Assembly (NCBI GenBank): GCA_973895155.1
Contig: OZ316898.1
Span: 12,237,187-12,301,186, forward strand
DNA: 64,000 nucleotides
Direction: 5' to 3'
DNA from: Marsupella aquatica
Taxonomy: Eukaryota; Plantae; Marchantiophyta
Every line of letters begins with the position of its first letter. Position 1 is the first letter of the stretch. The notes below the pieces were generated by a model that worked only from the letters and a program-made list of their open reading frames with translations, had not been told where the DNA came from and ran no database searches. This document shows positions 1,050 to 4,267 of the stretch, piece after piece. Both the position numbers and the translations under genes were made by a program.

Positions 1050-4000
1050 TTATAATCTTGGTTCCGGCCAATTTGGAATGTTTGCTGTTGCCTCATTAAC
1101 TGCTTTGACCAAGGTCACCTGTACTCACAAAAGTCATGCCCAAAGAAATGAGAACGATAGTACTACAACAGAAAAGGTTTAAATAAATACATCAGTAAAA
1201 ATCGAGCATGCCAACATGGAGGAAAACTAATTTGCGCCTTCAAGTTTCCGGGAGGTTCGACTAGCCATCACGTGCAAGTAATCTGTTCTAGGCACAAGAA
1301 ATTGCAACAGTGTTCCAAAGCTTCTCACGTTTGGAAGAATGTTCACTCCGGATGTTAATGAGCATTTTTTGTGGCTAATCTGAAACAAAATTTGCGCGAT
1401 TTGTGCGTTTAAGGGTGCCGAAAAACTTCAGTTTACAAAGTGAGCAGGTTCGTGAAATCCGAAAGTACTCCAAACTTACCACTGTTTCCGGAATTCCAGG
1501 AGGGGGTAAAGGGAGATTTCTGGGAGGATATTCTTCTGTAAAGGACCTCTTGTCAAACCTCCACTCCCCGATCTTCCCATACGTCAACTCACCCTACAAG
1601 AACATGATCCAGAATCCGAGCTCAGACTCAATTTGAAACAATCTATGTTTCTTAATAGGATTCGGATCACACTTTTTATTTTTCAACTTTGGATTTCTCC
1701 GCAATAGATTTAAAAGATTTGTTTTACTTGATTCATCAAAAACTTCATATTTAGTTGCGGGTCTTACAAAAGCGAAAGGTTTTTGTTTGGGAGGTATAAC
1801 CCATGGGAGGTATAAACCCTGTGTAGGTTAAAAACTATCTGTCCTGCTCACAAGAAATTCTTACTATCGTAACATCTTATGAAATGCAACATTCGTACCC
1901 AACTACGTCCTCCGGAAAAATATGGGTTCGTGGTTATACTGATAATGAATCAACGCTGACGACTTTGTTCACTTTTGTTGAGCATAATCGAGGATCAAAT
2001 GGGTTAACTCTGCCAAAACCATCTAAATGCAACTATTGTGCATACATGAATTCAAGTAACATCTTTCAACCTCAATAGTCATAGCGGGCTCCATTTACTT
2101 TCGTTTTGTTGCAAGCATGGAGGATAGGGTACCTTCAAATTGTAATCACATCCATAAGAATAGTGAATGATACAACTCTTCTTGATTTCTGTATCAAACG
2201 GAGGCTGGAAACATACGGCAATACCACAGGATAAGACGGTTGACGTGAAAACCCAAATTACCTTCAATGTGTAATCACATCCATACGTGTAGTGAATGAT
2301 GTACATGTCTTTTAATTCAAGGTCCCAAGGAGGCTGAAACCAAACAGCAGAGAAACTGTCATGAGTTATGACATTGATTCATAAACGATACAGGACGTAT
2401 ACTTCGGACAAGAACAATGAGGAACTCGGCCACCCAAAAATCCAGAAGACTTAAAGTGGAAACTTGGCGACTTCAGCTCCTTCCGTGAGCTAGTGACCTT
2501 TACCTGGAGCATGAAGTCTTTCCTCAGTACGTGCTGTACACCATGAAGGGCAGATGCTGTAGCATAGGCGTACCTGCCATAGAGTACACACCAATTTTAA
2601 CCAGCCCAATTCACCAGTTCCCTATCATTCAATGAAAAGCCCTCTGTTGTCACACTATGTATGACAAGCACAGCTTTCGCGCGTATCTGTAAAACCTAGA
2701 AAAGGCACTATTTTCAAATTTTTGGACTTACATTTCCAGCACCCAACCAAATTTCTTATCGGCTTCTGGGTCGTCTTTCATGGCTACCGCGGTATTGTGC
2801 CAGGTTGGTGCAATCTTCATCAGCTGAGACTGCACTCACCAAAGATAAAACCCAATTTCCCCGAATCAGAGCAAAACTTGCATGATGAAGTCGGGATGCC
2901 GAACGCTTGACAATACAACATGGTAAACTCTATAGTGCTAGGTAGATGAAGTTCCAGGGGGGGGCAAAAACTCCAGTAACACCTTCTTGATGATGACTGG
3001 CGAGTTGCCGATCGGGTCAATGTTGGTGATTGGGCCCTTTTCGACTGGAAAAAAATTTCGCAAAATCTCTTCATTCAGTTGGGGCTCGATGTAGAAAAAG
3101 GGAAACGCGGCAGGCAACTCATCTGTAGCCAAATTAGGCAGCGGTCGTATGAAAATGTGATCTGGTTCGGCCATCATAATATAGCTGACACATGACGGCG
3201 TTGGGGAGCTATTAGTTTCGCAGATAGGTACTGTCTGGCGCGCTTTCTACTGCCGACCCAGGTAAGCAAGCTAAAATAGGGGTCACTTCTCCAACGATGA
3301 GATGAAATCAGTAGTGACTTCAGAGATTGACAAATAAGCGATTCTGTCATTTCTTGAAAGAATCCAAAGAGCTGACTACCATGAGTTATTATTTCAAACA
3401 CTCACTCTTCTTCAATGGTCGCCTGTTCTAGCCACTGAACAAACGCCCACGGACGGTTCAAAACGACATATCCCTGCACATTCAACCGTCCACTTGTCTC
3501 AGTTAGGTATGGGTCTTCACTGTAATAGAACGTAATGCGCACCGTAATGTCATTCTCTACGGGTCTATCAAGCTGGCAGTTGCAGGCAAAGTGAGGATAT
3601 CCTGATTTCTTTAATTTCCAACGCCACCTGAGAAGGTGAAGAAACACAAGACTGATCCACAATGCAACAGGAGAGAGAAGAAACCCCAGAATGATACTTT
3701 AGAAATTGCTGTGGAGCGAATTTGCAAGCACGAACGAACTAGCAGATAAACTGTCTATCCTAAATGCCCGGAAAAGGCTCTTTCTAGAGCAAACATTCTC
3801 AGCCGTTGCGGAAAAAAGGAGCCACACACCCGATCTTCGCCCGGAGGCAGAGGCTTCACTATGAATGTGGGAATTTCATCCATCACGTCGTCGGGTGTGC
3901 CTGAGTGCAAGAGCCGGGTGAACCCGCCCATTTCGGAGTCCGGATGATCCTTGAATTTCTTGTACCAGTAGTACATAATCCGGCACTGCCACCGGTTATA

Positions 4001-4267
4001 CTTGGACTCATTGGCCGTGACGACGACGTGAAACAGCCTCTTTTTCGGCGGCCCCTGCTGCGACCCCTTGAAATCGCGCGGCATTTTCACTAGAGGATCG
4101 AAATACTTTCCGGAATTCTCGTCATCTAGCACAGCCCTAGAAAGAACACCGCGACCAGAGAAGTTCAACTTCGTCCTGTACGCGACGATCATCGTAGCCG
4201 TGTTGTACGTAGCCACACAGAGCGCAAATGTGACCGCCAGCAAAAAAATGAAAGTCGTCCGCCTCAT
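1050..4267 (-). CDS. HPAT: Hydroxyproline O-arabinosyltransferase (HPAT/RDN1 family), about 376 aa. Exons: 4267-3830, 3473-3406, 3184-2983, 2829-2732, 2573-2504, [2333-2262 or 2204-2133], 1593-1480, 1118-1050
   Basis: N-terminal TM anchor, then family motifs WQCRIMYYWYKK, MGGFTRLLHSG, GYVVLNRPWAFVQWL, MAEPDHIF, IGNSPVII, FGWVLEMYAYA, HYTYGCDY and GEWRFDKRS. All junctions are GT-AG with matching phases, and the ORF ends ANIPNWPEPRL*. Confidence 0.95.
2133..2204 (-). other. HPAT exon 6b, tandem paralogous exon (PPFDTEIKKSCIIHYSYGCDYNLK)
   Basis: 72 nt, phase 0/0, flanked by ttccag| and |gtaccc; 16/24 aa identical to exon 6a; no stop or indel. Confidence 0.85.
2262..2333 (-). other. HPAT exon 6a (PPWDLELKDMYIIHYTYGCDYTLK)
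   Basis: 72 nt, phase 0/0, flanked by tttcag| and |gtaatt. Confidence 0.9.

What the first reader, a model, noticed from the sequence alone, without database searches (positions are those of the whole stretch)
2133..2333. Candidate mutually exclusive exon pair in HPAT (tandem duplicated exon 6, 57-nt spacer)
Seen in sequence: two 72-nt, phase-0 exons with intact AG/GT sites encode PPWDLELKDMYIIHYTYGCDYTLK and PPFDTEIKKSCIIHYSYGCDYNLK. They are 16/24 identical. Six of the 8 differences lie in the variable first half, while IIHY.YGCDY.LK is kept, which looks like purifying selection on both copies. The spacer is 57 nt, whereas the other HPAT introns are 153-539 nt. Established: a too-short donor-to-branchpoint distance enforces mutually exclusive splicing in animals, and such exon pairs are rare in plants. 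Inference: one gene makes two arabinosyltransferase isoforms that differ next to the conserved His motif, possibly changing substrate preference (extensins vs signalling peptides) or tissue use.
Basis: partly seen in the sequence, partly recalled or inferred. Interest (0 to 1): 0.85.

Follow-up and report, generated by a model that had tools for sequence, protein, structure and literature searches.

The report
Conserved duplicated exon pair in HPAT
A bryophyte gene for the enzyme that starts arabinose decoration of cell-wall proteins carries two adjacent look-alike 72-base exons that selection has kept intact in at least two species; this fits two alternative enzyme versions, but so far only the first exon has been seen in messenger RNA.

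Summary
On the minus strand lies a complete 8/9-exon HPAT (GT95) gene. Exon 6 is present twice (2333..2262 and 2204..2133). Both copies are 72 nt, phase 0 and AG/GT-flanked, encode peptides 16/24 identical, and are separated by 57 nt.

New here:
- The same pair, with a 65-nt spacer, occurs in a second species (L084, dS about 0.75-1).
- 6b groups with 6b across species. It is 83% identical without gaps, like true exons; no 72-nt intron window exceeds 61%.
- 6b keeps every family-invariant residue.
- Depth arithmetic suggests the in-genome paralogue also has the pair.
- About 75 seed-plant loci and three other bryophyte-like loci have one exon 6.

RNA-like contigs of a related organism join 6a directly to exon 7 in at least two contigs. 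Constitutive double inclusion is therefore excluded there. No transcript using 6b was seen; the only 6b RNA contig is unspliced.

Verdict: 6b is a real, selectively maintained exon pair and a strong candidate mutually exclusive exon, with 6a as the default. Use of 6b, the steric mechanism and any change of substrate remain unproven. The scan has noted similar tandem exon pairs elsewhere in this genome (SEC6, AP-1 sigma, phytepsin).

The parts
1050..4267 (-). Complete HPAT (GT95 hydroxyproline O-arabinosyltransferase) coding region. Exons: E1 4267..3830, E2 3473..3406, E3 3184..2983, E4 2829..2732, E5 2573..2504, 6a, 6b, E7 1593..1480, E8 1118..1050 (stop included).
   Evidence: Pfam PF23452 on four exon translations. 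Exon borders come from the sequence and from spliced contigs of a relative, with joints 3472>3829, 3184>3406, 2829>2983, 2570>2729, 1592>2261 and 1116>1478.
2504..2573 (-). Exon 5. Its donor must choose between the 6a and 6b acceptors.
   Evidence: Sequence. An E5 to 6a joint is seen in the relative's RNA contig (joint 2304>2504 with 29 diverged 6a letters between).
2355..2376 (-). 22-nt intronic block 20-40 nt upstream of the 6a acceptor, identical in the second species. It probably holds the branch-point region of the 6a acceptor. Its CAATGT can pair with the last bases of 6a.
   Evidence: Alignment A6. RNAalifold predicts a 7-bp helix with one compensatory pair, from two sequences only. Caution: the ends of other introns are about equally conserved.
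2262..2333 (-). Exon 6a, the default copy (PPWD...IIHYTYGCDYTLK).
   Evidence: AG/GT flanks. The 6a-to-exon-7 junction appears in 2 RNA contigs of a relative at depth 341. The orthologue in L084 is 60/72 nt and 20/24 aa identical.
2205..2261 (-). 57-nt spacer intron between 6a and 6b, by far the shortest in the gene. A conserved CTTAT (2235..2231) lies 27 nt before the 6b acceptor and only 30 nt after the 6a donor. The spacer is in frame and stop-free in this species only.
   Evidence: The L084 spacer is 65 nt, with the same CTTAT 28 nt before the acceptor and 37 nt after the donor.
2133..2204 (-). Exon 6b, the second copy (PPFD...IIHYSYGCDYNLK). Candidate alternative exon; its donor (GTACCC) is weaker than that of 6a (GTAATT).
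   Evidence: AG/GT flanks. The orthologous 6b in L084 is 60/72 nt identical without gaps. No 72-nt intron window exceeds 44/72. Family-invariant residues are kept. In RNA it is seen only inside an unspliced low-depth contig spanning 2106..2238.
1480..1593 (-). Exon 7, the acceptor used by the 6a donor (and presumably by the 6b donor).
   Evidence: Joint 1592>2261; Pfam match.

Best explanation
Exon 6 of this bryophyte HPAT gene was duplicated in tandem before the window's species and the L084 species diverged, and probably before the in-genome paralogues diverged. Both copies have since been kept as intact, protein-constrained exons. 6a is the default exon. 6b is most likely an alternative coding exon that replaces 6a in a minor, stage- or condition-specific mRNA. 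That mRNA would give a second HPAT isoform that differs in 8 of 24 residues around the invariant PPxD...IIH(Y)xYGCDY motif. Shown: the anatomy, the conservation, and 6a-to-exon-7 splicing that skips 6b in a relative. Inferred: the exon 5 donor chooses between the two acceptors. Once 6a is used, its donor cannot pair with the 6b acceptor, because only 30-37 nt separate it from the likely branch point in the 57/65-nt spacer. It therefore splices to exon 7, and the result is one exon or the other, never both.
For: Anatomy: equal length, equal phase and AG/GT on both copies in two species. Orthology: 6b_window-6b_L084 60/72 nt and 6a-6a 60/72, against 47-51/72 for 6a-6b pairs, so there has been no recent conversion and the duplication is old. 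Exon-like conservation: 6b is 83% identical and ungapped, the same as 6a, E3 and E5. Introns are 43-65% identical with gaps, and 0 of 1461 intronic 72-nt windows exceeds 44/72. Nonsynonymous change in 6b is 0.15 per site, against a synonymous background of 0.52 in the other exons (binomial p 1.6e-8). Protein-type constraint: 7 of the 8 residues that differ between the 6b orthologues lie in the 10 family-variable positions, and only 1 lies in the 14 conserved ones (Fisher p 0.002). P1, P2, D4, H14, Y17, G18, C19 and D20 are invariant in 121 HPAT exon-6 peptides and are kept in both 6b copies. For 6a versus 6b, pN 0.18-0.22 is well below pS 0.63-0.82 (p 0.02 and 3e-6). Both exons show reduced synonymous change (0.31 against 0.52, p 0.03). 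By my own recollection of the literature this is typical of alternatively spliced exons. RNA: contigs of a related organism join 6a to exon 7 (2 contigs, depth 341), and a diverged paralogue does the same (loose end at 2270). The short spacer persists in both species (57 and 65 nt) while all other introns are 153 nt or longer. Paralogue: in run X2 a depth-17 contig covers about 2130..2303. This is inferred from bin depths: 29.1-12.1 = 17.0, and 20.4-12.1 = 8.3, which equals 57 nt.
Against: No junction into or out of 6b (2504>2204, 2133>1593) was seen. The only RNA-run contig over 6b (214 nt, depth 5.2 against 341) runs into intron on both sides, so it is unspliced RNA or DNA. That run comes from a related organism, is contigs only, and its tissue is unknown. 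The codon test between the two 6b orthologues alone cannot reject neutrality (omega about 0.5 from 12 changes). Synonymous sites are conserved too, so part of the constraint acts on the nucleotide sequence. Introns of 57-65 nt are at the lower limit in plants but not clearly impossible (my own knowledge), so the steric block is unproven. Only two species carry direct sequence evidence. The paralogue and organism A are indirect or partial.
Confidence: 0.55

Rival explanations
1. 6b is conserved for an RNA-level role and not as part of a protein. For example, it could act as a decoy exon or splicing-regulatory module that binds spliceosome components and tunes splicing of the long 6a-to-exon-7 intron or the HPAT mRNA level. 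Any 6b-containing RNAs would then be non-productive.
For: Synonymous sites of 6b are as conserved as nonsynonymous ones (pS 0.25, pN 0.15; omega about 0.5). Splice sites and flanks are conserved. The only RNA signal over 6b is unspliced. A 7-bp complementarity links the upstream block to the 6a donor region.
Against: The changes between the 6b orthologues follow the protein family's variable and conserved positions (p 0.002). All invariant catalytic-motif residues, the exact 72-nt length and the frame are kept in both species. A decoy has no need for that. No known RNA family matches.
Confidence: 0.2
2. 6b is a cassette exon that is sometimes included together with 6a after removal of the 57/65-nt spacer. 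Because 72 nt is in frame, this would give an enzyme with a tandemly repeated 24-residue motif. The pair would not be mutually exclusive.
For: Both exons are in frame, so double inclusion is not punished by nonsense-mediated decay. Introns of about 60 nt do occur in plants (own knowledge).
Against: All assembled mRNA-type contigs in the relative skip 6b, and no 2262>2204 joint was listed. Repeating a motif that holds the invariant His and Cys inside a GT-A type fold is unlikely to be tolerated. The likely branch point lies only 30-37 nt from the 6a donor.
Confidence: 0.1
3. 6b is a silent relic of an exon duplication (a pseudo-exon) that merely has not yet decayed.
For: No transcript evidence for its use. 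6b evolves faster at the protein level than 6a (16/24 against 20/24 identical between species) and carries unusual residues (S16 where 121/121 homologues have T; C11 in the window).
Against: At a divergence where introns retain at most 61% ungapped identity, 6b retains 83%. It has no indel, no stop, intact AG/GT and all invariant residues in two species. F3 and S16 are shared derived states, which means they were fixed and then conserved.
Confidence: 0.08

Closest known systems
Mutually exclusive homologous exon pairs formed by tandem exon duplication (criteria of WebScipio/Kassiopeia, PMC3228551 and PMC3923563; the steric-hindrance type is classically described for animal alpha-tropomyosin exons 2/3, from my own knowledge)
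   Same: Neighbouring internal exons of identical length, the same phase, conserved splice sites and clear sequence homology. The intervening intron is very short and places the branch point close to the upstream donor. The pair is conserved across species.
   Different: This is a plant (bryophyte) gene. The Kassiopeia paper (PMC3923563) states that reports of mutually exclusive spliced genes in Arabidopsis are rare and that its 99 internal candidates there are predictions. Use of the second exon and strict exclusivity are not shown here.
Arabidopsis FLM/MAF1 mutually exclusive exons (PMC3266260)
   Same: A plant gene in which one of two adjacent internal exons enters the mRNA and changes a short protein segment.
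   Different: The FLM exons differ in length (19 and 15 residues). The 3' one is called a cryptic exon that arose recently within the MAF1-3 clade, and both isoforms are experimentally documented. The HPAT pair is an equal-length homologous duplicate, older than a species split at dS about 0.75-1, and only one isoform is documented.
HPAT / GT95 enzymes of other plants (Arabidopsis HPAT1-3; Physcomitrella HPATa/b, PMC4738400; Marchantia Mp3g24020, PMC12398305)
   Same: Same family (PF23452) and the same exon-6 unit of 24 residues with PPWD...IIHYTYGCDY. There are two paralogues in the genome, as reported for Physcomitrella, whose two proteins are 87% identical.
   Different: All other loci examined here have one exon 6: about 75 metagenome-borne seed-plant loci and four further loci from other plants, L081, L085, L086 and L089. 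None of the HPAT papers read here mentions splice isoforms (0 occurrences of splic/isoform/exon).
Other tandem exon pairs noted by this scan in the same genome (SEC6, AP-1 sigma last exon, phytepsin insert)
   Same: Adjacent look-alike exons kept intact in relatives, with available mRNAs using only one copy (AI notes, unchecked by me).
   Different: They are different genes, and I did not examine them. If they are real, they suggest a lineage-wide habit and not an HPAT peculiarity.

Membership tests
Mutually exclusive homologous exon cluster | Neighbouring internal exons of the same or nearly the same length | tested here: met
   72 and 72 nt in the window; 72 and 72 nt in L084.
Mutually exclusive homologous exon cluster | Same reading frame/phase and canonical splice sites on every member | tested here: met
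   Both exons are phase 0 and AG...GT-flanked in both species.
Mutually exclusive homologous exon cluster | Sequence homology between the exons | tested here: met
   16/24 aa and 51/72 nt identical; tblastn E 2.5e-10 against the first 12 kb of the window and about 1e-8 against the whole window; 0 chance matches in shuffles.
Mutually exclusive homologous exon cluster | Mature transcripts of both kinds exist, each with exactly one member | tested here: inconclusive
   The 6a-only form is seen (joint 1592>2261, 2 contigs, in a related organism). No 6b-only form is seen. The data are contigs only, from one RNA-like run of unknown tissue.
Mutually exclusive homologous exon cluster | No transcripts that contain both members | tested here: inconclusive
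   No 2262>2204 joint is listed, but 9 joints were not shown and contigs drop rare forms.
Mutually exclusive homologous exon cluster | A mechanism that enforces exclusivity (steric hindrance, competing RNA structures, incompatible spliceosomes or NMD) | not testable with these tools
   Spacer of 57/65 nt with a conserved CTTAT 30/37 nt from the donor. This is compatible with steric hindrance but needs a minigene test. NMD cannot act because double inclusion stays in frame. All sites are GT-AG.
HPAT (GT95, Pfam PF23452) | Significant match to the family profile over the catalytic domain | tested here: met
   Exon 1 scores 98 bits (cut-off 23.9), exon 3 64 bits, exon 7 38 bits and the 6a/6b stretch 24.6 bits. 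The exons are 55-77% identical to Avena HPAT P0051.
HPAT (GT95, Pfam PF23452) | Family-invariant residues of the exon-6 motif (P1, P2, D4, H14, T16, Y17, G18, C19, D20) | tested here: met
   6a keeps all of them. 6b keeps all except T16, which is S in both species.
HPAT (GT95, Pfam PF23452) | Hyp O-arabinosyltransferase activity | not testable with these tools
   Needs an enzyme assay. The fold model of a homologue is GT-A-like (Foldseek hits to GT6 enzymes, TM about 0.4).
Decayed pseudo-exon | Neutral divergence, indels, stops or lost splice sites in relatives | tested here: not met
   83% ungapped identity against at most 61% for any intron window; intact frame and splice sites in L084.

The most novel reading that the evidence does not exclude
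A bryophyte lineage has kept, for tens of millions of years, a true mutually exclusive pair of homologous exons in its HPAT gene(s). A spacer too short to be spliced enforces the exclusivity. The result is two arabinosyltransferase isoforms that differ beside the invariant His motif and serve different acceptor proteins or life stages. Together with the SEC6, AP-1 sigma and phytepsin pairs noted in the same genome, this would point to animal-style tandem-exon isoform switching as a recurrent device in this plant lineage.
Probability: 0.45. Interest if true: 0.7.

Novelty: new member of a known kind. Interest (0 to 1): 0.5.

Why it matters
HPAT adds the first arabinose to hydroxyproline on extensins and on small signalling peptides, and it controls tip growth in moss and pollen (PMC4738400). 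A second isoform changed next to the invariant catalytic-motif residues would be a new and simple way to diversify this modification. Documented mutually exclusive splicing of homologous exons is scarce in plants (PMC3923563). A pair conserved across species, with a 57-65-nt spacer, would be a clean and genetically tractable test of whether the steric mechanism known from animals also works in plants. The finding also matters for annotation: gene predictors may include both exons, or the wrong one.

Tried and rejected
1. I searched the stop-free 99-codon frame 6a-spacer-6b against the protein collection. Only single-exon ORFs of other plants came back, with no 6b-type peptide. The length window (55-173 aa) may hide shorter ORFs of relatives.

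2. The first metagenome scan with that frame found nothing. The second, with an exon-7 profile, gave 80 loci, all with a single exon 6 where the motif scan found it (10 loci gave no hit), and none close to this organism.

3. I tried to reach full-length bryophyte HPAT proteins. The 50% representative search and a profile search (best 120 of 1286 listed) returned only seed plants. MAFFT scattered the exon fragments along the scaffold, so no clean all-exon profile could be made.

4. Conserved intron flanks would be the usual sign of a regulated exon. I rejected this argument because the last 50 nt of the other introns are about as conserved (33-39 of 50) as those next to 6a/6b.

5. The codon-based omega between the two 6b orthologues alone is not decisive (12 changes, omega about 0.5). 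The argument rests instead on rate, on ungapped conservation and on which residues change.

6. A search for docking/selector-type RNA pairing found only a 7-bp helix with one compensatory pair in two sequences, which is too little.

7. The in-frame, stop-free spacer could suggest an intron-retention isoform. It is not conserved: the spacer is 65 nt in L084 and shifts the frame.

8. The AlphaFold model of a homologue has pLDDT below 50 over the exon-6 segment, so I drew no structural inference about isoform differences. There is no solved relative by sequence.

9. Rfam gave no hit at E up to 1.

10. Cluster look-ups around L084 gave only the same species again (L090, L091).

11. The taxon was not established. 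Other agents' notes call the genome a liverwort. No protein in the collection is closer than 73% to exon 1.

Full report
OBSERVATION. The gene lies on the minus strand. Exon 6a is 2333..2262 and exon 6b is 2204..2133. Each is 72 nt, in the same phase, preceded by a pyrimidine-rich tract ending in CAG and followed by GT. The peptides are 16/24 identical, with 6 of the 8 differences in the first half, and nucleotide identity is 51/72. A 30-nt core pattern matches only these two places in the 64-kb window, with none in 100 shuffles. tblastn finds no third copy. The spacer is 57 nt, and the gene's other introns are 356, 221, 153, 158, 170, 539 and 361 nt.

THE GENE. Exon translations match Pfam PF23452 (HPAT): exon 1 at E 9e-28, plus exon 3, exon 7 and the 6a/6b stretch. 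With one copy of exon 6, the model runs from the ATG at 4267 to the stop at 1050 and gives about 376 residues. The borders were read from the sequence. Spliced contigs of a related organism confirm them with CT..AC joints at every intron. All searches used single exons by reference, and the fold was made for a natural homologue.

RNA EVIDENCE. No run on record as RNA holds this locus. One run (X1, organism A) holds exon-only contigs that are 92-97% identical to the window, plus a more diverged paralogue, so it is cDNA of a relative. Two of its contigs (depth 341) join exon 7 directly to the end of 6a (joint 1592>2261), skipping 6b. The paralogue's contig does the same (loose end at 2270). An exon 5-to-6a joint is also seen. 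The only X1 contig over 6b is 214 nt long at depth 5.2. It aligns from 2106 to 2238, which means it runs into the intron on both sides of 6b, so it is unspliced. 6a is therefore the default exon, constitutive inclusion of both is excluded in that organism, and use of 6b is not shown. Contigs drop rare isoforms and the tissue is unknown, so absence is weak evidence. Runs X2, X4 and X5 are DNA. X2 matches the window exactly and also carries a paralogue about 88% identical. From bin depths, a depth-17 contig covers about 2130..2303 (29.1-12.1 = 17.0; 20.4-12.1 = 8.3, equal to 57 nt). This suggests that the paralogue also has 6a-spacer-6b. That is an indirect reading.

RELATIVES. About 75 HPAT loci from metagenome contigs, all seed-plant-like, have one exon 6 upstream of exon 7. 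So does L081. A search with exon 1 found nothing closer than 73%. That best hit lies on a 3.7-kb Logan contig (L084) which carries the whole gene and the same tandem pair. The 6a type is at 2388-2459 and the 6b type at 2525-2596. Both are 72 nt and AG/GT-flanked, with a 65-nt spacer. Three further bryophyte-like loci (L085, L086, L089; 57-72% in exon 1) have a single exon 6. The duplication is therefore confined to a lineage that contains the window's species, L084's species and organism A.

SELECTION. 6b groups with 6b and 6a with 6a across species (60/72 nt each, against 47-51/72 for 6a-6b pairs). The duplication thus predates the species split, and recent gene conversion has not homogenised the copies. 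The species differ at about 52% of synonymous sites in the other exons (dS 0.75-1). Segment by segment, exons are 76-87% identical without gaps and 6b is 83% without gaps. Introns are 43-65% identical with many gaps. None of 1461 intronic 72-nt windows finds an ungapped match better than 44/72 in the orthologous intron.

Nonsynonymous change in 6b (0.15 per site) is far below the synonymous background (p 1.6e-8). Of the eight residues that differ between the 6b orthologues, seven lie in the ten positions that vary across the family and one in the fourteen conserved positions (p 0.002). The residues invariant in 121 distinct HPAT exon-6 peptides are all kept except T16, which is S in both 6b copies. 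F3 and S16 are shared derived states. Between 6a and 6b, pN is 0.18-0.22 and pS is 0.63-0.82 (p 0.02 and 3e-6).

Two caveats apply. The codon test between the 6b orthologues alone gives omega about 0.5 from 12 changes. Synonymous sites of both 6a and 6b are unusually conserved (0.31 against 0.52, p 0.03), which points to added nucleotide-level constraint. By my own recollection of the literature, that pattern is typical of alternatively spliced exons.

MECHANISM (inference). The spacer is the only short intron in both species (57 and 65 nt), and it contains a conserved CTTAT 27-28 nt before the 6b acceptor. If that is the branch point, only 30-37 nt separate it from the 6a donor. This is below the spacing that spliceosomes need in animals and yeast, and at or below the shortest plant introns (my own knowledge, not tested). 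The exon 5 donor would then choose between the two acceptors. After 6a is chosen, its donor can only reach exon 7. After 6b is chosen, 6a is removed with the intron. The 6b donor is weaker (GTACCC/GTATCA) than the 6a donor (GTAATT in both species), which fits 6b as the minor, regulated exon. A 22-nt block upstream of 6a is identical in both species and can pair over 7 bp with the end of 6a, with one compensatory change. With two sequences this is only a lead. Flank conservation is not special to this exon pair.

PROTEIN CONTEXT. A model of Cryptomeria HPAT (P0292, 30-sequence alignment) has mean pLDDT 72 and resembles GT-A enzymes of family GT6 (TM about 0.4). The exon-6 segment has pLDDT below 50, so I draw no conclusion about how the isoforms would differ. 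PPFD in place of PPWD occurs in a few functional-looking HPATs of grasses, so that change is tolerated in the family.

LITERATURE. The Physcomitrella HPAT paper reports two genes whose proteins are 87% identical, and it does not mention splicing. Marchantia has one HPAT. Homologous-exon mutually exclusive splicing in plants is known mainly from predictions (Kassiopeia). FLM/MAF1 is the classic documented plant case, and its exon pair is unequal and recent. Notes of this scan report similar pairs in SEC6, AP-1 sigma and phytepsin of the same genome, also without RNA proof of the second exon.

VERDICT. The pair is real, old and under exon-like, protein-type constraint in both copies, so 6b is not a decaying relic. 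Mutually exclusive use is the best-supported reading (0.55), but the defining evidence, mRNAs that contain 6b instead of 6a, is missing.

Noticed in passing
window 1602-1835 (inside the intron between 6b and exon 7): DNA-run depth jumps about 80-170-fold over the flanks (X2 1120-2320 against about 14). In organism C, contigs skip 1676-1818 (143 nt) and carry 14 other letters instead. This looks like a high-copy short repeat (MITE-like) inserted here, polymorphic between the window's genome and its close relative.
   Followed up: no
window 2082-2378 (minus strand): In this species the 57-nt spacer is in frame and stop-free, so 6a-spacer-6b forms a 99-codon open frame. This is not conserved (65 nt in L084), so it is probably a coincidence and not an intron-retention isoform.
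   Followed up: yes
window 2262-2264 and 2133-2135; L084 2457-2459 and 2594-2596: The last codon of both 6a and 6b is AAG (Lys) in the window and GAG (Glu) in L084. This is a parallel change in both copies, next to exon 7 starting GE... against GD.... It suggests either a short gene conversion at the exon ends or co-selection of both exons with exon 7.
   Followed up: partly
window 2370-2376 with 2264-2270 (minus strand): An upstream intronic YCAATGT can pair with ACATTGR at the 3' end of 6a, right at its donor. U-A in the window becomes C-G in L084. It could loop out 6a, but only two sequences are available.
   Followed up: partly
window 2314-2315: One X5 contig (organism C, depth 151 of 337) shows 3 extra bases inside 6a. 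This may be the paralogue's or an allele's 6a with one more codon, or an alignment effect in the variable half.
   Followed up: no
whole genome (notes of this scan): Several other tandem look-alike exon pairs have been flagged in the same genome (SEC6, AP-1 sigma last exon, CBS-PB1 tail, phytepsin insert). Tandem exon duplication with retained copies may be a lineage-wide feature worth a systematic count.
   Followed up: no
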